The notes below the pieces were generated by a model. It saw nothing but the letters and a program-made list of their open reading frames with translations, did no database searches and was not told the origin of the DNA. From Anthoceros angustus (taxonomy: Eukaryota > Plantae > Anthocerotophyta), in assembly GCA_010909165.1 (NCBI GenBank), contig VJWM01000019.1:620001-684000 (forward strand): a stretch of 64,000 bases of DNA. The letters are read 5' to 3'. A program made the translations under genes and the position numbers. This document shows, one piece after another, positions 41,095 through 53,064 of the stretch (positions are counted from its first letter, which is position 1; every line of letters starts with the position of its first letter).

Positions 41095-41480
41095 ATGTGC
41101 ATCACAATAGCCATTTCCATTTCGAAGCAATGTGCATCACAACAGCCATGTCCATTTCGAAGCAATATGCATCCCAAAAGCCAATTTCTAGTTGGAAGCA
41201 TGTGCATCACAACAGCCAATTTTCATCAGAAAGTATGTGCATCACAACAGCCATGTCCATTTCGAAGCAATATGCATCCCAAAAGCCAATTTCTAGTTGG
41301 AAGCATGTACATCACAACAGCCAATTTTCATCTGAAAGTATGTGCATCACAACAGCCATTTCCATTTCGAAGCTATGTGCATCGGCAAGAAGCAATGACA
41401 CCATTTAGATAGAATAGCCATTTCGACAGCTATGTGCATCACAATAGCCATTTCAATTTCGACGGTGGTATGTGCAACAC
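41095..41480. repeat. About 35-bp monomer array with a 105-bp higher-order unit
   Basis: About 9 copies of ATGTGCATCACAACAGCC-like cores; the spurious ORFs show a 35-aa (105-bp) period. Confidence 0.85.
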
Positions 41481-41589: not shown

Positions 41590-42640
41590 CGATATCAAAC
41601 AGAACCCATCAAAGAACTCATTGCACACTTCTGAATTGCCAATTTGAGGCATCTTCCCCGTCAGAGTTGAGAACCATCAAAGGACTCATTCCACACTTTT
41701 GAAATGCCATTTGAGGCATCTTCCCTGTCAGAGCTGAGAACCATCAAAGGACTCGATTCACACTTCTGAACTACAATTTGAGGCATCTTCCCCGTCAGAG
41801 CTGAGAACCATCAAAGGACTCATTCCACACTTCTGAAATGCCATTTGAGGCATCTTCCCTGTTAGAGCTGAGAACCATCAAAGGACTCGATTCACACTCA
41901 TGAACTACAATTTGAGGCATCTTCCCCGTCAAAGCTGAAAACCATCAAAGGACTCGATTCACACTTCTGAAACTACAATTTGAGGCATCTTCCCCATCAA
42001 ATATGAGAACCCATCAAAGGACTCATTCCACACTTTTGTCCTGCCTCAAGACTCGATTCACACTTCTGAACTACAATTTTGAGGCATCTTCCTCGTCAAA
42101 TCTGAGAATCCATCAAAGGACTCATTCCACACTTTTGTCCTGCCATTTGAGGCATCTTCCTTGTAGGAGAGAACCCATCAAAGGCCTCATGCCACACTTT
42201 TGTGCATTTGAGGCATCTTCCCGCCGAGCCGAGAACCATCAAAGGACTCATTCCACTCAAATGCCATTTGAGGCATCTTCCTGAGTGAGAACCATCAAAG
42301 GACTCGATTCACACTCATGAACTACAATTTGAGGCATCTTCCCCGTCAAAGCTGAAAACCATCAAAGGACTCGATTCACACTTCTGAAACTACAATTTGA
42401 GGCATCTTCCCCATCAAATATGAGAACCCATCAAAGGACTCATTCCACACTTTTGTCCTGCCTCAAGACTCGATTCACACTTCTGAACTACAATTTTGAG
42501 GCATCTTCCTCACAATCGAGAATCCATCAAAGGACTCATTCCACACTTTTGTCCTGCCATTTGAGGCATCTTCCTTGTAGGAGAGAACCCATCAAAGGCC
42601 TCATGCCACACTTTTGTGCATTTGAGGCATCTTCCCCGTC
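41590..42640. repeat. About 60-bp minisatellite/satellite array with a 417-bp higher-order duplication
   Basis: 15 copies of TTTGAGGCATCTTCC alternating with GAACCATCAAAGGACTC; about 41869-42221 recurs almost exactly at about 42286-42636. Confidence 0.92.
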
Positions 42641-42773
42641 TTCCTTTGTGCACAACCTTGTATACTCTTGATGAGTGAGTATATTGGTTTGATTCTCTCA
42701 AGATCAAATGTTCGTGTTCCTACAACTCTAGACTAGATAGTGCTGCAAAATACTCACATCTTGTCTCTGGCTT

Positions 42774-42910
42774 CACATGGACTAAGGAAGCATTCGACCA
42801 TCCATCACCTCATAAAACATTTAGGATGTGCACATACTCTTGGCTCCACATGGACCAGGGAAGCATTCGACCATCTATCACCTCATAAAACATTTAGGAT
42901 GTGCACATAG
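42774..42910. repeat. About 70-bp tandem duplication
   Basis: CACATGGAC.A.GGAAGCATTCGACCATC.ATCACCTCATAAAACATTTAGGATGTGCACATA x2. Confidence 0.85.
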
Positions 42911-43206
42911 TCTAAACTAGATATGAACGCGCATAGCCCTTGTGGTGGAGATCCACTTGGAGGAGGAAGCTTAAGCTGAAGTCATGTGATACAAGACGCG
43001 TGATATACTTTATTCAAATACTACCTGCACATTTTCTGAAGTCTCATTGGGCCCCTTGAAGTCCTCGCGGAACCTTCGTTCTTGATTTGTGGAAGTGGTG
43101 AGTGAGTTGGTTGCTGAGGGGATCTTGTTTACTAGTTTCTGCACACAGCCATAACGTCGGGCCCATCTTCCCGTCCATCATGGTATATGGAGAGTCGAGC
43201 ATATTG

Positions 43207-43274
43207 GCAGCTTCATTGTTTTCGCATGGGATGTCCTGCGGCAGCTTCATTGTTTTCGCATGGGATGTCCTGCG
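43207..43274. repeat. 34-bp perfect tandem duplication
   Basis: GCAGCTTCATTGTTTTCGCATGGGATGTCCTGCG x2. Confidence 0.9.
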
Positions 43275-45149
43275 GCTGAGAGCGATGAGAAGCTAGCAGG
43301 CTAGCGGGTGGTTCGCACTTTCACATGCGTGAGGGAGGAACACGAACGTCGCAGATCCGGATGCAACCATGCCTCCTTCTTTTTCATAGCATAGCATTGT
43401 GAAAAATGAAGGGCTTGTGTGACGCATTGCCCGCCCAGCAAAACCGGGTAGGAAGTCGGTCAAAATGAATTCCTTACAGCCAGACCCCTGGTTTTGACCG
43501 GCTAGTTGGTGGGGGACCCGGACAGCTCTTGGCCCACACACGGGACAGCAAAGCAGTCTTCGCCACACCATCCATACCTTCGTGGGAGTCTCCTTCTCCA
43601 AAGGCCTTTCTTGTTGAGTCTCCTTCTCCCTTTGTCTGCTCGCTTCCTGCCGACACGACAATCTAGACGTGTGATTTGCATGGCGACAGTCACAAACAAG
43701 GAAGGTTGCAGAAAGCAGATGGAGGGCAGGCTCGATCTGTCCCGCACCCCGCTGCTGGCAGGCCCTATCTGACGAGGGGGCCAATCCGGTGGCAGCATGA
43801 AGCGCATCCAATGTGCAGGATGTGGACCCCGGTGGGTCTGGGTCTGGGTCTGGGCCTGGCCGCCTGGAAGAGCCAAGTTGCCAAGCCTCGAGTTCATCCA
43901 CTAAAGTGTTAAGAACTCCTCCGCACACCATGAATTGTAGATGTATCGAGACTGGACGGGAGTAGAGTCATCTAGTGTAGATGCATACATCTCTGGTCCG
44001 CCGTTCGCACCACAGAAATGCCAAGAAGCCGCATCTTCCAAGCTTTCACGCGCCTCGAACGCATCAAAGACGTTGTTGCCTGGACGAGCCACATCCCCTC
44101 AGGGCAGACGCAACAGGCCAGACCTGATCGTCCGTCCTCTTCGGCGCTGGCCCTGGCGCCGTGCACGGTGCACGGTGCGCCACATGCTCGTCATTAGCCC
44201 GCCGTTTCCCGTTATCCCGTACACACACAAAAGGGTTCCGTCGGCGGTACGGGATTTCCTAAGAAAGAGAAAGGGAGGTAGAGAGATGATGTATGTATCA
44301 TGGAGTTCAGTCTTACTTGCTGTTGGCTTGCCGACCGGATAAGAGGAGGGAATCCTGGTGCCGGCTCTTATTTATTCTGAAAAGTATCTCACGTGGTATA
44401 GCCCTCCTGAGGCGAAAGCGGCAAATAAGCAGTAGGTAGCGTATCGCCAGTTGCGCCACCATGCGACCCCTTCCTCGCCTCCTTCCTGATGAATCCCGCC
44501 TGGACTGCGCAGGCACCAGCGCAGGGAGCGCTCCTTTTTCCCGTCTTCGGAATCGGGATGGCAGCTGACACCTGCCGGGAGATTCGGCATGAGTCGCTGA
44601 ATCGCCGGCTTGCGCTCTCGCGTTGTGCTGGGCGCACGGGCCGCCCATTTTCTGCGCTGCCCAACGTCTCCATTTTCGCCGTCTGCGGCCCAGCCTGCAG
44701 GATCGCTGCTGCTGCCTTGGATGCGGGGAGTTGGGCGGCCGCATTCCCGGGCTCGGAGGGAGATCGCGCGCCATGGGTGGTTGTGGGTTGGTAGGTAGGC
44801 TGGGATGAAGGGGACTGCCACCAGGTGGGCGGAATGTGCGAGGATCCGGGCCAAGTGGAAGAGATCGGGCGGGTGAGGGGACTCTGGGAGGCATGATTCG
44901 GAGCTCGGTGTGGAGAGCTGGATGTGAGACCGGGAGTTGGGTGCGGGGGGCTTGCAGGAGGTAGAGTATCGGGAGCTACGATGCTGGAGGGATTGTCATT
45001 GTGCAGCTGGTTTGGGGGTGGGCGGAGGGATTGGTGCTTGGGTTGGCGTGCTGAATTCTGGTGCCTGGGCTGCCATGGGATTGGAAACCAGGTGTGGTGC
45101 TGGTGGTGAGATCAGTGTAGAGAGCGGGAGGAAGGAGGCAGGGGCCAGG

Positions 45150-48100
45150 ATGAAGACCGTGGTGGTGGCAGGGACCAGCAGTGGGGTTGGGAAGACCACT
45201 ATTGCGGTGGGGCTCATGGCCGCGTTTACACGGAGGGGGTTGCGGGTGCAACCGTTCAAAGTTGGACCAGGTGGGTGTTTTGATGCCCGGGGGGATTGGA
45301 GAGGTATTTTGGGCAATTTTGGGCACCAGGATCCGGCTCTCTCTTTTGCAGAGGTAGAAGACGAAAAGGAAAAACTCGTACAGTGACAAGTAGGGGGCAT
45401 GAGGTGTTACTGGTTGAAAGGTCTGGTAGTGGGCTGTGCATTTGGTCTTTACCGACTGTGGCCCTTGCAGATTTCTTGGATCCCATGCACCACAAGGCAG
45501 CGACTGGCCGAGAATCTTTCAATCTTGATGGTTGGATGCTCAGCAGGTGTGGCGATTGACTCACCGTGATATGAAGAGGAAGTGTTGACCAGCTTACGCT
45601 CCAGTACTGAAGCTGAATCTCCATTTTCGTCTGCAGGGAAGTGAATCTGGCCTGTTTCATGCGCTATGAAGACATCACTGACATTGCCATAGTGGAGGGA
45701 GTGATGGGTCTCTATGATGGGCGGGATGGGAAGTCTGAAGTTGGGAGCACTGCGGAGATGGCCAAGCTGTTGGGGGCACCGGTGGTGCTCGTGCTCGACT
45801 GTTGGGCTCTTGCGCGAAGTGCTGCTGCTATGATCCGGGGTTACACATCTTTTGATAAAGACCTTACATTTGCTGGTGTGATATTTAACAAGGTTGACTT
45901 TGCTCTGTCTCTTTCTTTGCCATTGATGTCTCTGTGTGCTACTTTATGGATGGTCCCCTGGTTGAGGTTCTCGTTCAGTTTGTGGGACTAATTTCTGCCC
46001 TTGCTGGCTATTCTCAATTTCTTCGTTTCAGGTTGGAGGGTCTAGGCATACTGCTTGGTTATCGGAAGCCGTGCAGACAACTGAGCACGAAGTTAAGATA
46101 TTGGGTGGGGTACCAAAGGCTTCAGACATTGAAATTCCCGAAAGACATCTTGGGCTACATATGCCAGAGGACAGCGATTTACCTCAAAATTACATTGATA
46201 AGCTTGCAGATCTGATTGAGCAGAATGTTGATCTTGACGCCATCTTAAAGGCTGCAGAAATTGGTTCTCCAGTTGATGGTAGAGAAGATGTGAACGGCAG
46301 ATCAGGACATTTCATTATAGCACCTAACCTACCCAAACAAGTGAGAGTTGGGGTGGCACAGGACGCTGCCTTCTGTTTCTACTACCATGAGAACTTAGCA
46401 CAACTGCAAGGTAAGCATATCTCTGGGCAACACGTCTTGAAGGACTAACCTACAAGAGTACAGCTGTGTAGTCATTCCACTGAAGAAACAAGTTGATGTC
46501 TTGTAGATGCTGGGGCGGAGCTGGTCTTCTTTTCGCCCCTGAAGGATTTATTGCCACCTAGCCTTGATGCCATATATTTTGGAGGGGGATATCCTGAGCT
46601 ACACGGCAAGCAGCTTTCTGCCAACAAGCCCATGCTGTATGCAGTGAAGGCTTTTGCTGATGCAGGGGGTGTTGTCTATGGTGAATGTGGTGGTCTAATG
46701 TACTTGTCACAGGGAATTGAGGTCAGATATAGGTTTTAGAGCATGTTATTTCATTAGTTTTCGAAGTGAGTCTTCTAGAATGCAGGCTATGATTATCCAG
46801 CACCTTATTTGTTCCTATTGTCCATATTTCAGGGACGAGATGGAGAGCGCCACATGATGTGTGGTGTATTTCCATTTTGGACCAGAATGCAGACTTCAAT
46901 GCACATGGGATATGTGACGGTACTCATCTGAACATCTGTATGCGATGGCAAGTGACCTTTGGGCATTTTTTTAGTATGAAGTGAAATATTTTGCCCTCTA
47001 TGAAGGAAAAATTTGCATCATGTTGCATCAAAATCAAGATTTCACTGGCATCATCACCTGATAATTGAGCGGTGACATGATGTTTATGGCAACAGGTCAG
47101 GCCTCTAGACAGCTCTGTTATCTTTCCAGCTGATGTTGGGCAAATTCGGGGGCAAATGTACCACTTCAGTGAAATTGTTGACACCGATGGCAGCAGCATG
47201 GACAATTGTGCCAAAGGGTAAGACAGGTGGGAGTTATTAGCAACTTTTGTCTGGTCCAATAACTAATATCTTTTGGCGCTGAGATGGTATTGTTTCCTTC
47301 AAGCAGATTTACTGTTCGATTTGAATATGCAAAGGCAGTTGAAGAGCTTGAAGGATATATGCGTGGGAATGCTGTGGCCACGTATGTGCATCTGCATTTT
47401 GGCAGCAATCCTGCCGTAGCGCATTCATTCATACAATGCTGCAGGTTAGGATCTGCCCCTTACTTCCAATCACTGCTTGCATTTTTCAAGATTGTGGGCC
47501 AGTCTCACCTCTCCCACTGCTGCATGCCTACTCCTTAGTAGCCTTTTGTGTGAACTATTTTGAATTGACTTGCCGAGTTGATGTTATAATCCATGACAAC
47601 GTTCATGCCTATTCTCAGGATGGATCCAACCAGAGCAGCAGCTGTGGCAGCAGCCTCAGCATCAGCAGTCGCTGATGCAGGTCCTGCAGCGGCTGCAGCA
47701 GCGGGTGCAGCAGCAGCAGCAGCAGTGGCTGACGCCCTTTGGGAATCTCGGCCATTTAACAACCCTGAAGTGGCGATGTATGTAGAAGCAGACTGTCGGA
47801 GTCCAGGTTCAATGTTCTCAGAAGAGTTTGCTGCAGGTCTGGTGGAGAATGTATCGAATGAGGCAATTACACCAACACCTAACATCTTTAATTTGAGGTC
47901 CAAGAGTTTGTCAGAGGAGCAGGTATCAAAGCTTAGGCAATCAGAAATTATAATCAGACGTTGGGGGTCTTTTGACCTGGGTAGAAATGGAAGGATAGCT
48001 GACCCAAGAAAGGTTTCTGGTCAGATTGCTAAATCAGAGTCAGAGTTTTCTCTAACAGGGCCCCTTGAGAGTAGAAATGGCCGCCATGTAGCCCGAACAT

Positions 48101-49952
48101 TGAGTTTTAGTGACAGTAGCAGCAATGATAGTCTAGAAAGTAATGGTGCAGGACCCTTGAGCAGAGGAATTTCTGTAAATCCAGCTAGAGATGGTAGTGA
48201 TTTAAGTGAAGATAGGTGTCGAGATGTTGGGAGCATGCACAGCGCGAGCTTAGTAGATGGGGTTCAACAGCAAAGGCCTTCAACTTCTGGCACTGGAACC
48301 AGTCCCATTATTTGTAACGGCACAGGACACAAGGACGCTTTGGCTACATATTTTCTAGGTGGACTGTGCGGAGGCTCATCTAGTAAGGCAGGTGCTCCTA
48401 AAAGAATTTTGTCGCTGCTACCGTCAGCAACTGAGATTCTTATGACTTTAGGTATGTCATCTGGTCCTTTGGTTTGGCTTAAAGTCTGTAGGAGTCCTTT
48501 TTCCTTCCACCAAATCTTATTGCTGAGGCGTCCCTGAGTAACCAGGTTTTGATCCCTGTCTCTACAGGTGCAGGTGACCGATTGTTAGGTGTAACGGATC
48601 TGTGTGATAAACCAGCTGGAGTTTGTCTTGACCGGCATATTGTAAGTAGGACAGACGATTCTCAAGTTTTTCTTATCAGGGCTGGGTGCACAACTTCAAG
48701 TCTTAATTCATTCAGTTGCCTTTGTAGGTTTGTAGGAGCAAAATTGACACAACAAAGATGTCCAGCAAAGAGGTGGAGGCAGCCGTAAGTGTTAGCTTTG
48801 TCCTGGTACACATGTTTGTGTCTCCAGCTGCATGCCAATTTGGGCCTCCTCGGTTTGTGGCAGTCATGTCGTACTGTTTCTTATGCAGATGAAGGCTTTT
48901 ATGGCAGAGAAAACGAGCCCTTTCACACTTGACGAGGCCTGGATTGCGAGCACCAAACCAGATCTGGTTCTTACCCAGGTTAGATGACACTTCAATGTGA
49001 GTAGATAGCGGGTCAACGTAATAACATTATTGTCTTAAACATGCCACGGCTTGTTAATGCAGGATACCTGTGAGCAGTGTGACATTGACAGTAGTGAAGT
49101 TGCCACGGTTCTTGCTCGAGCAGGCCTCGTCAATGGGGAGAATACCACTGTGATTGTGCTGCGACCATACACGGTGGGTGCTCAATTACAGGTTTTTTTT
49201 TTTTTTTAATAAATTTTCTGAGCTTAGTCTGTTTCAAGTTAGGACGGGTTCTGAGAATGGTTGCAACCTCTTGATTGCAGGTTGCCGAGGTGCTTGCAAC
49301 AGTCCTGCAGATAGGTGGGGCTGTTGGCCTCTATGCTGAGGCCTCTTTGCAAGTGAAAGAGTTACGAGCACGACTTCGAAGAGTTGCAACTGCAGTGGCG
49401 AGGCGCGAAAGGCCAAGCGTCATGCTGCTGCAAGGCTTGGATCCTTTTGTCCTTGGTGGTCATTGGGTACCAGACATGGAGAACCTAGCTGGAGGACAAG
49501 ACGATCTTCAGAGGATAGGCTGTGATGCAGAAAGGTTATATTGGCCTCGTGTTGTATCCTACGCACCTGAGGTTCTCATCTTGGCTCCATGCTCTTCCAG
49601 TCTGGAACGGACGCTGTCTGAGGTACTCATTGATGGATGTGGAATTATCCCAAAGGCTTTCGTAAACAGTCCTCTGACGTGTACTGTACTGCAGGTGTCA
49701 ATTGTTGCCAGGCAACCTGGATTTTGGACCATTCCAGCTGTGGAATCGAGACGGGTGTACATCTGCGAGCACTCTTATTTCAGCCGTCCAAGTGCATCAA
49801 TTGTGGATGGAATCGAACTTCTGGCCCACATTCTGCACCCTGAAGCCGGCATCCCCTTGAAGTTGCAAGATGCAGCTTTGCAGTTATCCCTTAAAAAGGG
49901 ACAGAAGTGCAAGCCTTATGATTTGGCAAAGCACTTCACACCACTGGAGTGA
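45150..49952 (+). CDS. cbiA: Fusion of cobyrinate a,c-diamide synthase (CbiA/CobB) and a type-III periplasmic-binding (BtuF-like cobalamin/Fe) domain, multi-exon
   Basis: N-terminal part: [12 protein letters not shown]-loop, FKVGP|[60 protein letters not shown] and YVHLHF. C-terminal part: [20 protein letters not shown]|[14 protein letters not shown] and [21 protein letters not shown]. The intron 47445-47618 joins the two halves in frame (AG|G ATG). Confidence 0.9.
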
Positions 49953-50195
49953 AGGTGGTTCGTCCTTAAGCACCTGGTGCCAAGGAGCACATGTAACATA
50001 GGTGAATCTTGAGCCGTTCAGCTGAGGATATGGCTGGTCTAGACATCTTTCTGTTGTAAATCCTTGCTTAGAAAGCGTGAGCGGCAGCTTCATAGTCCCG
50101 TACTGTACAGTAGGGCTGCACACTTACTTCCCTTGCTATGTGGGCAGAGCACGTTGTGTAAAGCTGTAAAGAAATTACAGATGCCGGAAGCCTAA

Positions 50196-51503
50196 TCAAT
50201 CGGTAGAAAGCACAGCGCAGTCAGGGGATGGCTCTATTTCGTCCGCTGGCTGCCACCATTCCAGAATGTTCCAGAGAAAGTAGTCGATAATCACCATGAT
50301 ACAGAAAAGCTTGCCGGCCCAGGGTCCACAAGCATAGAATCTGCTGAGACGTTGCAGGAGGTCATTTGTGCGCGTCTGCAAGGCTTGATCATATACTTGC
50401 TCAGTTCTTCTTGCAACATCTGTCCAGCTGTATAGGTCTCGTATTCTGCTATGCATACGATGTGGATCAATCCGAGGAAGAACCTCAATCGCCTTGCTAA
50501 TGGCCTCCACAATGGCCTCGGAGGCAGGCTCTGCCAGCACAATCATATCGGGTGGCAAAACCTCTGGAACACCGCCAACCCGCGTGCTAACAGTGAGGAG
50601 TCCACAGCTGGCTGCCTCCAATAAGGCGATGCAGAAAGCCTCAGTAAGAGAGCAGTTCAAAAAGATGTGGCCTTGAACAAGTACTGAACGCACATCAGCA
50701 TGTGGCACAGCTCCGAGCATCTTCACCCGGTCCTGAATCTCATGCTTCTCCCGCATCTCCTCCAAGCTCACACCTTTAGGTCCATCCCCTCCTACGATGA
50801 ACTCAACACCCGGAAACATGCGGCAAATAGTCGGGATTACTTGGACCAATAGATCTGCTCCCTTGCGATACACCAGCCTGCTCACCACAACAATAACAAT
50901 CTTGTCCGTCGGTCTCCGGCTCACATCAGGCCGGAACACTGCAGTGTCCACTGCACTGGGAATGACGAAAACGTTCCCAGGAGGAATCCCTGATCGCAAC
51001 ACAGTGTTCTCCTTGCTGGTGTGAGAAACGCAAATAGCATGATCCACATCCGCCAAGGTGAATTGCAGAACCTTGTTCATGTGGATGCTTCCAGCGCCTG
51101 CAAACCCATCCAAAGAGTGGTCTGTGAACACCACCTGCAAGCCCATAGTGCGGGCGTGCAAGATTGCTTCATGGCATAGTGTCGAGAAGGCCTGGTGGCC
51201 GTGCACAATTCCAATGCGCTCCCGCAGAATAATGTCCCTGATGACGGGGAAGCTGCCATATATGGTGGGGAAGGTGGCCTGCAGCAGATAGGGCAATCGG
51301 GGAATGTAATAAACCTTGAGCCCGTTGGTCATGTAGCGAACACCGCTGCGCTTGGCATAAGCATGTGTGGCCACCACCACCTTGTGCCCTCGCTGCAGCA
51401 GCAGCTGGGACAGGTAGTAGATGTGATTCTCTACGCCCCCGAAGCTAGGGTAGAAGAAATCCGACACCATCAACACCCGGTGCTTCTGCTGGGGAGGATC
51501 CAT
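50196..51503 (-). CDS. PIGA: GPI N-acetylglucosaminyltransferase catalytic subunit A (PIG-A/GPI3/SETH2), single exon
   Basis: 435-aa ORF: MVSDFFYPSFGGVENHIY, VFTDHSL, SRLVYRKGADLL and FLNCSLTEAFCIALLEAASCGL, with a C-terminal TM helix. Confidence 0.96.
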   Translation of the reverse strand: MDPPQQKHRVLMVSDFFYPSFGGVENHIYYLSQLLLQRGHKVVVATHAYAKRSGVRYMTNGLKVYYIPRLPYLLQATFPTIYGSFPVIRDIILRERIGIVHGHQAFSTLCHEAILHARTMGLQVVFTDHSLDGFAGAGSIHMNKVLQFTLADVDHAICVSHTSKENTVLRSGIPPGNVFVIPSAVDTAVFRPDVSRRPTDKIVIVVVSRLVYRKGADLLVQVIPTICRMFPGVEFIVGGDGPKGVSLEEMREKHEIQDRVKMLGAVPHADVRSVLVQGHIFLNCSLTEAFCIALLEAASCGLLTVSTRVGGVPEVLPPDMIVLAEPASEAIVEAISKAIEVLPRIDPHRMHSRIRDLYSWTDVARRTEQVYDQALQTRTNDLLQRLSRFYACGPWAGKLFCIMVIIDYFLWNILEWWQPADEIEPSPDCAVLSTD

Positions 51504-51802
51504 TGCGAGGGTTAGGGTTGCGTCTGGAAAGTTCCTAGAGGCGAAGCTTGTTGAAAGTGAGAAACATGCTCGATGCGGGACATTTGTATTGACAAACCAC
51601 TGTTCCTTTCAGCTAAAAAGGTAGTGATCAAAATCACATTTAAATTGTACACCATCCGTTTGGAGTTAGACCCATGCACACAAGGATGGAATGTGGGGTG
51701 CAGCAGCCTCAACCACGAACGTGGCATCCACTTCCGCAGTCCGAGTACACCAGCACTACCCTAAATACACAATGCAGACTGGCGTAAGCCATGTCATCAG
51801 CC

Positions 51803-53064
51803 TCAATAATCTTTCTTCTTAGACCGACGTTTCTTCTCTGTGCTTCTCTCCTCGTCAACGGAGTTTTTGATCTACACACAAAGTTATGAAGCAAGGTTAG
51901 CCAAATCCGCACTTCATAATTCTGGAAGTTCCGACACGCAGGAACAATTTCAACACCTGTGACCAGAAGCATCTCACTCCTTACCATGATGTGAAGAATG
52001 CGGATGAATATGGCGGCGAAGTCCAGATACAAATCCAAGGCATGCGTCACATAATCAAGATCTCCGTGGTCTGCCCTCTCAATGATCATCTGAGTGTCGA
52101 ACAAAATATAACCGACGAACAACAGGAGTCCTCCATAGAGCTGCACGGACAAAGACAACACTCAGAACGTTCCCAAAACCCTGCATGGCCCGCACAAACA
52201 AAAGGGATTGAAACGTTCAGTCCAGTTGCCATCAGGAACGTGAGGAGGGAGGGTTACCTGGATGTTGAAGTTCAAGATTGAAGCCCCAAAAAAGTATGCA
52301 CAGACATGCAGCAAGAGCATGGTGCTCATGGCAGACGACAGGACACCCCCAAGGAATAAAAATTCACGACGCCTGGCCAACAGAGCCGAGCCAGTGAAAC
52401 AACCAAAAACCACCACAGTTCCCAAGAACGCTGTGATCACAAGACTGCACTCACAGACGAAGCCCACCGATTAGAAACAGCCCATGCATGGCAATAAGGT
52501 CAACCAAGGGTAACTCATGTCTTCAAACCCTTTCCTACCTCGGATTGATTTCTGTAGCAAGCTCAATCAACGGCCCGAACGAGGCTCCCTGAAGAAAAGA
52601 AATTGCTCCCAAGAGTTTCCACCTCGTGCTCTGCAAGGCATCGCAGTTTATTAGCCCTTTAGACCAAAGGATCCATCCTGAAACAAGATAGCCTGAAGAG
52701 CAACCCATGCCTGAGCATACCTTGTTAGAGCTGTAAGCCGGCAACGCCGCGAGCCATATGACACAACCGAACAAACCAATGGTGGTGAGATACCCTCCGA
52801 AGTTCCAGAACAGATGAGCAGAGCATCCCAACACAGAAATCAGAACCGACGCGGTGAGCGTGGCGTAAACCTGCAACACAAACACCCCTGTCAAAACACC
52901 GAGCTCAGCCAGAAATCCCTCCGCTCAGAGGAGTCCAAGCACAGAGGGCTTACCCGCTGCAGGTGCGATTGGACGACGGGTGAGATCCCCCGGAAGTTCT
53001 TCAAAGCATCGTAGTTCCAACCCGCAGAGGGCCTCTCCTCGAAGAAGGCTGATGCCGCATCCAT
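51803..53064 (-). CDS. BI-1: Bax inhibitor-1, 6 exons
   Basis: YDALKNFRGISPVVQSHLQR|VYATL, FLQGASFGPLI, FGCFTGSALLARRREFLFLGG and LFDTQMIIERADHGDLDYVTHALDLYLDF; Lys/Arg-rich tail EKKRRSKKKDY*. Confidence 0.93.

What the first reader, a model, noticed from the sequence alone, without database searches (positions are those of the whole stretch)
45150..49952. Land-plant gene fusing a cobalamin-pathway amidase (CbiA/CobB) to a BtuF-like corrinoid-binding domain
Seen: a spliced gene with many introns and an intact ATPase P-loop (SGVGKTT), DP and EG motifs, glutaminase Cys (GECGG) and His motifs of cobyrinate a,c-diamide synthase. It is joined in frame, through an Ala/Ser-rich linker of roughly 270 aa, to a periplasmic-binding-protein fold ([26 protein letters not shown]). 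Established: de novo B12 synthesis is prokaryotic; CbiA amidates the corrin a and c positions; BtuF-type folds bind corrinoids, and algal CBA1 is BtuF-like. Inference: this may be a domesticated corrinoid capture and remodelling module, perhaps tied to cyanobacterial symbionts or to a retained B12-dependent methionine synthase. It may instead act on another modified tetrapyrrole. In the binding domain the usual THECD motif reads TDLCD, which hints at a changed ligand.
Basis: partly seen in the sequence, partly recalled or inferred. Interest (0 to 1): 0.85.

Follow-up and report, generated by a model that had tools for sequence, protein, structure and literature searches.

The report
Plant CobB amidase fused to BtuF-like domain
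This seed-free land plant has an intact spliced gene joining a vitamin-B12-pathway amidating enzyme to a bacterial-type tetrapyrrole-binding domain; the same fusion is old and widespread in algae and seed-free plants but seems unstudied, so eukaryotes may process corrinoids more than is thought.

Summary
A 15-exon gene with GT-AG introns (45150-49952, + strand) encodes 1052 aa. It has a full CobB/CbiA a,c-diamide synthase, a linker, and a C-terminal class-III binding-protein domain related to BtuF and to haem-binding proteins.

The fusion is not special to this genome. It occurs in liverworts, mosses, lycophytes, a fern, streptophyte and green algae, a haptophyte, oomycetes and a dinoflagellate. 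Each domain forms one eukaryotic clade, so it is vertically inherited and not tied to cyanobacterial symbiosis. I saw no seed-plant copy.

The window's CobB domain keeps 140 of 151 positions that are near-invariant in bacteria, including the P-loop and the glutaminase Cys338. Its binding domain keeps four Cys and a His that are invariant in cytosolic bacterial homologues. Land-plant lineages reported to lack B12-dependent methionine synthase have each lost some of these residues.

In the bacterial subclade nearest the eukaryotes, the homologue often lies beside cobB, btuR, cobU, cobQ or a BtuCD-type importer.

Best reading: a cytosolic corrinoid salvage or repair amidase with a built-in substrate-binding module. 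The substrate is inferred, not shown.

Other notes of this scan on the same genome (unchecked) report MTRR-like and CblD genes. This fusion was not noted before.

The parts
45150..49952 (+). Whole coding region of the CobB-linker-PBP gene. 15 exons: 45150-45270, 45471-45546, 45637-45892, 46032-46410, 46507-46721, 46833-46919, 47096-47217, 47307-47444, 47619-48451, 48568-48641, 48728-48784, 48889-48978, 49063-49173, 49281-49622, 49695-49952.
   Evidence: all introns GT-AG, 3159 nt, 1052 aa, no internal stop; colinear tblastn hits of orthologues P0202, P0208 and P0203.
45150..47444 (+). Exons 1-8: CobB/CbiA-type a,c-diamide synthase domain (aa 1-465), made of a P-loop ATPase part and a GATase_3 part.
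   Evidence: Pfam CbiA and GATase_3; NCBIfam NF002204 per-exon bits 55+103+86+88; 140 of 151 bacterial near-invariant positions kept.
45171..45197 (+). P-loop GTSSGVGKT (aa 8-16).
46686..46688 (+). Codon of Cys338, the glutaminase nucleophile in the GECGG motif.
47445..47618 (+). Intron 8, the only splice needed to join the CobB part to the linker and PBP part. If it were retained, the frame would stop inside the intron.
   Evidence: Orthologous single ORFs and transcripts show the joined form.
47620..47754 (+). Ala-rich segment (aa 466-510), 67-80% identical in all land-plant orthologues. It is predicted as two helices in the Marchantia orthologue.
47956..47979 (+). Conserved linker motif RRWGSFDL (aa 578-585). 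It looks like a basophilic-kinase site, but that is inference only.
48031..48051 (+). Second conserved linker motif KSESEFS (aa 603-609; RSESE[IV]W in the other land plants).
48400..49949 (+). End of exon 9 to exon 15: class-III periplasmic-binding-protein-like domain (aa 726-1050, Peripla_BP_2).
   Evidence: AF2 model of an orthologous domain with pLDDT 95.8; best PDB matches are 4m7o, Vibrio cholerae BtuF 5ysc and the haem-binding proteins PhuT and ShuT.
48603..48605 (+). Cys755 codon, in TDLCD (bacterial THECD).
49069..49080 (+). Cys819-x-x-Cys822, in TQDTCEQC.
49461..49466 (+). His914-Trp915, in GGHWVP.
   Evidence: The same GHW is present in V. cholerae BtuF.
49590..49592 (+). Cys957 codon, in APCSSS (bacterial PCGF).
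49785..49799 (+). RPSAS (aa 998-1002) in place of the near-invariant RPGPR. This change is specific to this lineage.

Best explanation
This is an intact nuclear gene for a cytosolic two-module protein, inherited vertically from algal ancestors. The N-terminal module is a catalytically competent CobB/CbiA-type amidotransferase. It would use ATP to activate the a and c acetate side chains of a corrin-type tetrapyrrole, and ammonia released from glutamine at Cys338 to amidate them. The C-terminal module is a BtuF-like two-lobed binding domain whose cleft is lined by four Cys and a His. I propose that it captures the tetrapyrrole in the cytosol and presents it to the enzyme, or takes the product away.

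The pair descends from a bacterial two-gene unit (cytosolic binding protein plus cobB) that sits next to corrinoid import and salvage genes. In eukaryotes, which cannot make corrins, the most likely job is salvage or repair of imported corrinoids that carry free a/c carboxylates, feeding B12-dependent metabolism.

Shown here: the gene structure, the domain identities, residue conservation, phylogeny and the bacterial synteny. Inferred: the substrate, the hand-over between modules, the cytosolic location (there is no N-terminal extension) and regulation through the conserved linker.
For: Gene and domains. The CobB domain is 46-52% identical to annotated bacterial cobyrinate a,c-diamide synthases. 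The Marchantia orthologue scores 472 bits against the CobB equivalog cut-off of 254. The window keeps 140/151 (93%) of bacterial near-invariant positions, including K15, D41, D44, E86, C338 and H447/H449.

The binding-domain profile's best characterised PDB relative is V. cholerae BtuF (2e-27), followed by haem-binding proteins. The fold is confirmed by an AF2 model and Foldseek.

The same fusion is found in about 20 eukaryotic lineages, as single ORFs and as transcripts. Both domains form one eukaryotic clade (SH-aLRT 97 for CobB; PBP land plants 100).

The nearest bacterial outgroups of the binding domain are P0055, P0037 and P0041 (95*). P0037 lies in the order PBP-FecCD-ABC ATPase-P0037-CobB. 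P0041 lies in the order FecCD-PBP-P0041-BtuR-CobB-CobQ. L068 has PBP-CobU-CobB. In the metagenome set, 6 of 47 loci with enough flank carry cobB within 5 kb downstream, and in three of them it is directly adjacent. My rough guess for a single-copy gene is about 0.1-0.25% by chance.

An independent bacterial CobB-TM-BtuF fusion sits inside a CobU-CobT-CobS-CobC-...-BtuR operon.

Residue pattern: the window and the streptophyte algae keep all ten key residues. Liverworts, mosses, lycophytes and ferns, reported to lack METH (PMC11439496), have each lost at least one. Liverworts lost CxxC and C957. Mosses lost C957. Lycophytes and ferns lost C338 and H401, among others.
Against: No eukaryote is known to make or hold cobyrinic or hydrogenobyrinic acid, and the later steps (CobQ and others) were not seen. 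Finished cobalamin has no free a/c carboxylates, so the proposed substrate (incomplete or deamidated corrinoids) is hypothetical.

The gene persists with an intact glutaminase Cys in Marchantia and in mosses, which are reported to lack METH. The green alga Tetraselmis has lost it. So the link with B12 use is imperfect and rests on few lineages.

Most bacterial homologues of the binding domain are not next to cob genes: 79 of 80 GTDB loci and about 85% of the metagenome loci.

The binding domain is far below the BtuF equivalog cut-off, and structurally it is as close to haem-binding proteins as to BtuF. The four-Cys site could bind a metal or an Fe-S cluster rather than a corrinoid.

AF2 shows no confident docking of the two modules (pTM 0.54). 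In this species RPGPR has diverged to RPSAS. No transcript of this species was available.
Confidence: 0.5

Rival explanations
1. The enzyme amidates an endogenous isobacteriochlorin such as sirohydrochlorin, siroheme or a precorrin-2 derivative, as CfbB does with Ni-sirohydrochlorin. The product would be an undescribed amidated tetrapyrrole in algae and seed-free plants, and the binding domain would hold this haem-like ligand.
For: The substrate would be available inside the cell (general knowledge of siroheme synthesis in plastid-bearing organisms). The CobB family includes CfbB, and the Marchantia orthologue scores 400 bits on the CfbB model. Haem-binding proteins (PhuT, ShuT, BhuT, IsdE) are as close in structure as BtuF. 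This reading would explain persistence in mosses, liverworts, lycophytes and ferns, which lack METH (PMC11439496).
Against: The score is below the CfbB cut-off (400 against 560) but well above the CobB cut-off. The nearest relatives are ordinary bacterial CobB enzymes. The bacterial synteny is with corrinoid genes (btuR, cobU, cobQ, btuCD-like), not with siroheme or F430 genes. No amidated siroheme is known from eukaryotes (my own knowledge).
Confidence: 0.2
2. In land plants the protein has lost or changed its original chemistry. It would survive for a non-catalytic or new role, for example a scaffold or sensor working through the highly conserved Ala-rich helices and a phospho-regulated linker. 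The binding domain would hold a metal or an Fe-S cluster on its four Cys rather than a tetrapyrrole.
For: The Ala-rich segment is the best conserved part in land plants (67-80% identity, against 55-69% for CobB and about 50% for the PBP). The linker motifs RRxGSFDL and RSESE are conserved. Vascular-plant copies have lost the glutaminase Cys and H401, and liverworts have lost three of the four Cys. Most bacterial homologues of the binding domain stand alone with unrelated neighbours. All four Cys and the His sit in loops at the C-terminal ends of beta-strands of both lobes, which is the usual place for a ligand or metal site.
Against: The window's own copy keeps 93% of bacterial CobB near-invariant positions and all catalytic residues, as do Marchantia (93%) and streptophyte algae (93-95%). 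That is hard to explain without retained catalysis. There is no direct evidence for metal or cluster binding.
Confidence: 0.2
3. The fusion is an artefact: either two neighbouring genes (a CobB gene ending in intron 8 and a separate PBP gene starting at the ATG at 47593), or bacterial contamination.
For: An in-frame stop lies inside intron 8, and an ATG-initiated ORF (47593-48537) starts near its end. Chara braunii is annotated with two adjacent models, g32417 and g32415. No RNA data for this species were available.
Against: There are fourteen canonical spliceosomal introns, and a eukaryotic PIG-A gene lies 244 bp downstream. Single uninterrupted ORFs with both domains occur in intron-poor algae and on metagenome contigs (P0018, P0181 and others). 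Transcriptome assemblies show the joined form (Tetraselmis, Pavlova, Chloropicon; the Pteridium transcript spans the end of CobB to the PBP; Logan contigs of about 4 kb encode 1048 aa). The residues right after the junction (CRMDxTKAAAV...) are conserved in all land plants.
Confidence: 0.05

Closest known systems
Bacterial cobyrinate/hydrogenobyrinate a,c-diamide synthase (CbiA/CobB; NCBIfam NF002204, TIGR00379)
   Same: Full-length homology at 46-52% identity. Same CbiA P-loop plus GATase_3 architecture. 93% of near-invariant residues are kept, including the ATP-site Lys and Asp and the glutaminase Cys. The orthologue scores above the curated cut-off.
   Different: It is encoded in a eukaryotic nucleus with 14 introns, in organisms that lack the rest of corrin synthesis. 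It is fused to a conserved Ala-rich helical segment, a disordered linker and a binding-protein domain. H398 of the bacterial GHEFH motif is Gln in nearly all eukaryotic copies. Activity is untested.
CfbB, the Ni-sirohydrochlorin a,c-diamide synthase of coenzyme F430 synthesis (NF033195)
   Same: Same enzyme family and the same a,c-diamide chemistry on a different macrocycle. It shows that the family can accept isobacteriochlorins.
   Different: The score is below the family cut-off (400 against 560). The gene is not from a methanogen and has no F430 context.
BtuF, the periplasmic vitamin B12-binding protein (E. coli 1N2Z/1N4A, V. cholerae 5YSC)
   Same: Same class-III two-lobe fold with a backbone helix. 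It is the best characterised sequence relative at profile level (5ysc, 2e-27). The LxPxxTE, DYP, GHW and RPxPR motifs are shared.
   Different: There is no signal peptide, and the domain is internal and hence cytosolic. It scores about 30 bits against the cut-off of 234 for the BtuF equivalog. It has four invariant Cys that BtuF lacks, and a C-terminal extension shared only with its nearest bacterial relatives. It does not serve an ABC importer as its substrate-binding protein.
Cytosolic four-Cys Peripla_BP_2 proteins of bacteria (about 310 aa; e.g. P0041, P0037, P0055; uncharacterised)
   Same: These are the direct homologues of the window's binding domain (35-44% identity) and have the same Cys/His signature. 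The subclade nearest the eukaryotes is repeatedly adjacent to cobB.
   Different: They are separate proteins, and the gene order is PBP then CobB, the reverse of the eukaryotic fusion. Most members are not linked to cob genes. Their function is unknown.
Periplasmic haem-binding proteins (PhuT, ShuT, BhuT, RhuT, IsdE)
   Same: Structurally as similar as BtuF, and they also bind a tetrapyrrole.
   Different: They are periplasmic transport components. No shared axial-ligand residues were identified here.

Membership tests
CobB/CbiA a,c-diamide synthase (NF002204 / TIGR00379) | N-terminal CbiA-type P-loop ATPase domain with GxGKT and the DxxDP and EG motifs | tested here: met
   Pfam CbiA 5e-13 on exon 1 alone; K15, D41, D44 and E86 kept.
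CobB/CbiA a,c-diamide synthase (NF002204 / TIGR00379) | C-terminal GATase_3 domain with the nucleophile Cys and the conserved His residues | tested here: met
   (GATase_3 7e-16 on exon 5). C338, H401, H447 and H449 kept.
CobB/CbiA a,c-diamide synthase (NF002204 / TIGR00379) | Whole-protein HMM score above the curated cut-off (254 bits) | tested here: met
   The window could only be scored exon by exon: 55.1+103.2+86.3+88.4 = 333 bits, a rough sum. The Marchantia orthologue's domain scores 472 bits and Selaginella's 382 bits.
CobB/CbiA a,c-diamide synthase (NF002204 / TIGR00379) | ATP- and glutamine-dependent amidation of the a and c acetates of cobyrinic or hydrogenobyrinic acid | not testable with these tools
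   Needs an enzyme assay.
CobB/CbiA a,c-diamide synthase (NF002204 / TIGR00379) | Operates within a corrin biosynthesis pathway (other cob/cbi genes in the genome) | not tested
   Only one window of this genome was read. By general knowledge, eukaryotes lack the pathway.
CfbB (Ni-sirohydrochlorin a,c-diamide synthase, NF033195) | HMM score above the curated cut-off (560 bits) | tested here: not met
   400 bits (Marchantia orthologue) and 333 bits (Selaginella). The window's exon sum is about 301 bits.
BtuF vitamin B12 ABC-transporter substrate-binding protein (NF002894) | HMM score above the curated cut-off (234 bits) | tested here: not met
   24-30 bits for orthologous and bacterial homologous domains.
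BtuF vitamin B12 ABC-transporter substrate-binding protein (NF002894) | Secreted or periplasmic, with a signal peptide | tested here: not met
   The domain is C-terminal in a protein that starts at the P-loop. The bacterial homologues start at the first beta-strand.
BtuF vitamin B12 ABC-transporter substrate-binding protein (NF002894) | Class-III (cluster A) two-lobe fold with a single backbone helix | tested here: met
   AF2 pLDDT 95.8; Foldseek probability 1.00 to 5ysc, 1n4a, 2r79 and 4m7o.
BtuF vitamin B12 ABC-transporter substrate-binding protein (NF002894) | Binds cobalamin or another corrinoid in the inter-lobe cleft | not testable with these tools
   Needs a binding assay or a structure. 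Model coordinates could not be inspected.
Pfam Peripla_BP_2 (PF01497) | Score above the gathering threshold (27.5 bits) | tested here: met
   Exon 14 alone scores 27.6 bits. The Marchantia orthologue scores 46.6 and Physcomitrium 35.3.
CBA1 (algal cobalamin acquisition protein 1) | Sequence homology to Chlamydomonas or Phaeodactylum CBA1, with a signal peptide and membrane or secretory location | not tested
   No CBA1 sequence was available to compare. This protein has no signal peptide, so a CBA1-like uptake role is unlikely.

The most novel reading that the evidence does not exclude
Eukaryotes carry out one 'biosynthetic' step of B12 chemistry themselves. A cytosolic CobB fused to a new, Cys-lined BtuF-like corrinoid chaperone re-amidates incomplete or damaged corrinoids. 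This module was present in the ancestor of land plants, stays fully intact only in the B12-using hornwort lineage and in algae, and decays step by step in lineages that gave up B12. The four-Cys cleft would then define a new class of intracellular corrinoid-binding protein, perhaps Co-S ligated or carrying an Fe-S cluster, shared with many bacteria.
Probability: 0.35. Interest if true: 0.85.

Novelty: new variant of a known kind. Interest (0 to 1): 0.66.

Why it matters
B12 is held to be made and tailored only by prokaryotes, and land plants are textbook non-users. A recent survey placed remnants of B12 metabolism in hornworts and liverworts (PMC11439496), but it did not include this gene. Here a catalytically intact corrin a,c-amidase homologue, fused to a tetrapyrrole-binding module, turns out to be conserved from green algae, haptophytes and oomycetes to hornworts, liverworts, mosses, lycophytes and ferns. 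That gives a concrete, testable handle on three questions. Do eukaryotes salvage or repair corrinoids? What does the large family of cytosolic four-Cys BtuF-like proteins of bacteria do? How did B12-related metabolism decay during plant evolution? If the substrate turns out not to be a corrinoid, it would point to an unknown amidated tetrapyrrole in plants and algae.

Tried and rejected
1. Bacterial contamination or two separate genes: rejected, see the fourth rival.

2. A general genomic link between the bacterial four-Cys binding protein and cob genes. Among the 80 best GTDB loci, only 1 had cobB within 10 kb. The recurrent neighbours were unrelated (squalene/phytoene synthase, HAD hydrolase, amine oxidase and others) and mostly reflected Nitrospira synteny. 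The link holds only for a minority, concentrated in the subclade nearest the eukaryotes.

3. PDB sequence search with the CobB domain gave no hit. Single exons gave only noise.

4. Rfam on 42000-52000 found nothing, so there is no riboswitch-like element.

5. The first search for related loci attempt failed because alignment A1 was too diverse.

6. AF2 coordinates are not exposed. The spatial clustering of the four Cys and the His could only be inferred from their positions in loops after beta-strands.

7. The full-length AF2 model of the Marchantia orthologue gave no confident inter-domain packing (pTM 0.54).

8. Seven literature searches found no study of the eukaryotic fusion. The only mention is a CobB-like transcript noted in passing in a haptophyte (PMC4057078).

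9. No orthologue from the window's own species or genus was found in the protein collections. The best match was 68-69% in the CobB domain, to Marchantia. The hornwort assignment therefore rests on tree position and on unchecked notes of other agents.

Full report
**Observation**

I rebuilt the gene by hand from the sequence and checked it by script. It has 15 exons between 45150 and 49952 on the + strand. All 14 introns are GT-AG. The coding sequence is 3159 nt, has no internal stop, and gives 1052 aa.

Single exons already hit Pfam CbiA (5e-13), GATase_3 (7e-16) and Peripla_BP_2 (2e-6). They also hit the NCBIfam CobB equivalog NF002204 (1e-15 to 1e-29 per exon). tblastn with orthologues from Marchantia, Spirogloea and a fern-like transcript gives colinear hits from 45150 to 49943 and nowhere else in the window. 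The next gene is an intronless PIG-A glycosyltransferase on the opposite strand, 244 bp downstream.

**How widespread the fusion is**

- An exhaustive HMMER search with exon 14 found many proteins of 900-1450 aa that carry the binding domain at their C-terminus. BLAST against my model showed that they also carry the CobB domain.
- Named members come from these groups:
  - Liverworts: Riccia and Marchantia.
  - Mosses: Physcomitrium and Ceratodon.
  - Lycophytes: Selaginella and Diphasiastrum.
  - A fern: Pteridium, as a transcript.
  - Streptophyte algae: Spirogloea, Chlorokybus, Mesotaenium and Chara. Chara has two adjacent gene models.
  - Green algae: Chloropicon, an Ostreococcus-like picoalga, Tetraselmis, Monoraphidium and Trebouxia.
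  - The haptophyte Diacronema/Pavlova.
  - The oomycetes Aphanomyces and Saprolegnia, and the dinoflagellate Prorocentrum. In these three the fusion continues into a Kelch propeller and DUF5522.
- Single uninterrupted ORFs on picoalgal contigs and transcriptome assemblies show that the two domains are made as one protein.
- No seed plant appeared in these capped searches.
- The window's protein is 68-69% identical to Marchantia in the CobB domain and about 50% identical to all land-plant copies in the binding domain.

**Phylogeny**

- In a CobB-domain tree, the 17 eukaryotic sequences are separated from the 60 closest bacterial CobBs by one branch (SH-aLRT 97). Streptophytes (99) and land plants (99) form clades. 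The window branches first within the land plants.
- In a binding-domain tree, land plants again form a clade (100), and all eukaryotes sit together.
- This pattern indicates vertical inheritance.
- The branching position fits a hornwort. Unchecked notes of this scan also call the genome a probable hornwort and report MTRR-like and CblD genes in it.

**The CobB module**

- It is 46-52% identical to annotated bacterial cobyrinate a,c-diamide synthases from Acidobacteria, cyanobacteria and Melainabacteria.
- Of 151 columns that are at least 93% invariant in 60 bacterial CobBs, the window keeps 140 (93%). These include the P-loop Lys, D41/D44, E86, the glutaminase Cys338 and H447/H449.
- The Marchantia orthologue scores 472 bits against the CobB cut-off of 254, but only 400 against the CfbB cut-off of 560.
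- By sequence this is a CobB. Its activity is untested.
- The sequence search found no homologue of this domain in the PDB copy.

**The binding module**

- An AF2 model of the orthologous domain from Spirogloea is very confident (pLDDT 95.8). It matches class-III binding proteins; the top hits are 4m7o, V. cholerae and E. coli BtuF, and the haem-binding proteins PhuT, ShuT, BhuT, RhuT and IsdE.
- A profile of the family hits 4m7o (6e-29) and V. cholerae BtuF (2e-27) best.
- It is not a BtuF orthologue: it scores about 30 bits against a cut-off of 234.
- Its true relatives are a large family of bacterial proteins of about 310 aa without signal peptides. At least 600 loci occur in Nitrospirota, Binatia, Acidobacteriota, Chloroflexota and others.
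- This family has four invariant Cys (window C755, C819, C822, C957) and a His-Trp (H914-W915). All lie in loops right after beta-strands of both lobes, where class-III proteins bind their ligands.
- The window has one change of its own: RPSAS instead of the near-invariant RPGPR.

**The linker**

- The first 45 residues after the CobB domain (aa 466-510, [39 protein letters not shown]) are 67-80% identical in all land plants. That is more than either domain.
- They are predicted as two helices of moderate confidence in the Marchantia orthologue.
- Two further motifs, RRxGSFDL and RSESE[IV]W, are conserved in an otherwise disordered stretch. They look like basophilic-kinase sites, which is inference only.
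- AF2 gives no confident packing between the two domains (pTM 0.54).

**Evidence on function from bacteria**

- Across the 80 best GTDB loci, the stand-alone binding protein is almost never near cob genes: 1 of 80, with unrelated neighbours.
- The bacterial proteins nearest to the eukaryotic clade are P0055, P0037 and P0041 (95*). They give a different picture:
  - P0041 lies in FecCD - periplasmic PBP - P0041 - BtuR - CobB - CobQ.
  - P0037 lies in periplasmic BtuF-like PBP - FecCD - ABC ATPase - P0037 - CobB.
  - L068 has PBP - CobU - CobB.
- In a metagenome scan seeded with these three proteins, 6 of 47 loci with at least 1.5 kb of downstream flank carry cobB within 5 kb. Three of these (L100, L102 and L106, one lineage at about 91% identity) have it directly adjacent. 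Two shorter contigs (L107 and L151) also show cobB directly adjacent. L100 looks like a free-standing two-gene unit.
- By pairwise identity, the linked loci represent at least six distinct lineages.
- An independent fusion, CobB - membrane segment - canonical BtuF, sits inside a CobU-CobT-CobS-CobC-...-BtuR operon.
- The association is therefore recurrent and far above my rough chance estimate, but it holds for a minority of the family.

**Pattern in plants**

A published survey found METH, MTRR and CblC/D only in hornworts among land plants. It found CblB and CblJ in liverworts, and it reports none of these proteins from mosses or vascular plants (PMC11439496). It did not include this gene. 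I scored ten key residues: five in CobB and five in the binding domain.

| Lineage | Residues lost |
|---|---|
| Window; streptophyte algae Spirogloea and Chlorokybus | none |
| Marchantia | CxxC and C957 |
| Riccia | CxxC, C957 and C338 |
| Mosses | C957 |
| Selaginella and Diphasiastrum | C338, H401, H914 and others |
| Ferns | C338 and/or H401, and CxxC |

This fits stepwise decay after B12 use was lost. The sample is small and the lineages are related, and the alga Tetraselmis has also lost C338. Marchantia and the mosses still keep 90-93% of the CobB invariants. The gene is thus not simply a relic where METH is absent.

**Interpretation**

The most coherent reading is a cytosolic corrinoid-processing enzyme. 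A binding module receives an imported corrinoid; in bacteria this happens next to a BtuCD-type importer. The CobB module then amidates free a/c acetates with ATP and glutamine.

Eukaryotes lack the rest of the pathway, so the substrate would have to be an incomplete or deamidated corrinoid. That is a salvage or repair role, and it is inference.

Cys ligation of corrin cobalt has precedents in BtuM and in the MMACHC-MMADHC complex (PMC6072759 and PMC12501144, seen). The Cys-lined cleft is therefore compatible with corrinoid binding, but a metal or Fe-S site is equally possible.

The rivals are an endogenous isobacteriochlorin substrate, a changed or non-catalytic role in land plants, and an annotation artefact. 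The last is largely excluded.

**Novelty**

[quoted passage not shown] One transcriptome paper mentions a CobB-like sequence in a haptophyte (PMC4057078). I found no paper that describes the fusion, its distribution, the four-Cys binding family or the conserved linker. It is a new variant of known kinds, not a new category.

Noticed in passing
window 50196-51503 (-): An intronless 435-aa PIG-A (GPI GlcNAc-transferase) gene lies tail-to-tail with the CobB-PBP gene. The stop codons are only 244 bp apart (Pfam PIGA 3.5e-41).
   Followed up: partly
window 47620-47754 (aa 466-510): The 'low-complexity' Ala-rich stretch is the most conserved part of the protein in land plants (67-80% identity from hornwort-like to fern). 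It is predicted as two helices. Its function is unknown: membrane association, oligomerisation or packing on CobB are all possible.
   Followed up: partly
L082 3302-5584 (protein P0230): A bacterial metagenome contig encodes one ORF with CobB, a hydrophobic segment (LIPLVALIALLPISAAA) and a canonical BtuF-like domain, inside a CobU-CobT-CobS-CobC-...-BtuR operon. This would tether a cytoplasmic amidase to a periplasmic B12-binding protein.
   Followed up: partly
L100 2223-4579; L102; L106; L151; L083 5360-6489: Recurrent bacterial two-gene unit: a cytosolic four-Cys Peripla_BP_2 protein directly followed by cobB. In L083 it lies downstream of a complete BtuFCD-like importer. The four-Cys family (at least 600 loci in many phyla) seems to be uncharacterised.
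   Followed up: partly
P0213 (Aphanomyces), P0216/P0219 (Saprolegnia), P0215 (Prorocentrum): In oomycetes and a dinoflagellate the CobB-PBP fusion is extended at the C-terminus by a Kelch beta-propeller and a DUF5522 domain.
   Followed up: no
window 41095-41412: Tandem repeats of about 100 nt give repeated peptide units (…CASQQPCPFRSNMHPKSQFLVGSMCITTANFH…) in two frames. This is probably a minisatellite in intergenic DNA.
   Followed up: no
window 44500-45100: The stretch just upstream of the start codon is very GC-rich (65%) with strong positive GC skew. An in-frame upstream ATG at 45075 would add 25 aa, but orthologues start at the P-loop as in the chosen model.
   Followed up: partly
other pieces of the same genome (scan notes s1-278036, s1-305996): Unchecked notes report two more binding-protein-like genes in this genome: one fused to a glutaminase-less asparagine-synthetase-like enzyme, and one that is GPI-anchored and BtuF/CBA1-like. 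Together with this gene they suggest several tetrapyrrole- or chelate-binding modules in this plant.
   Followed up: no
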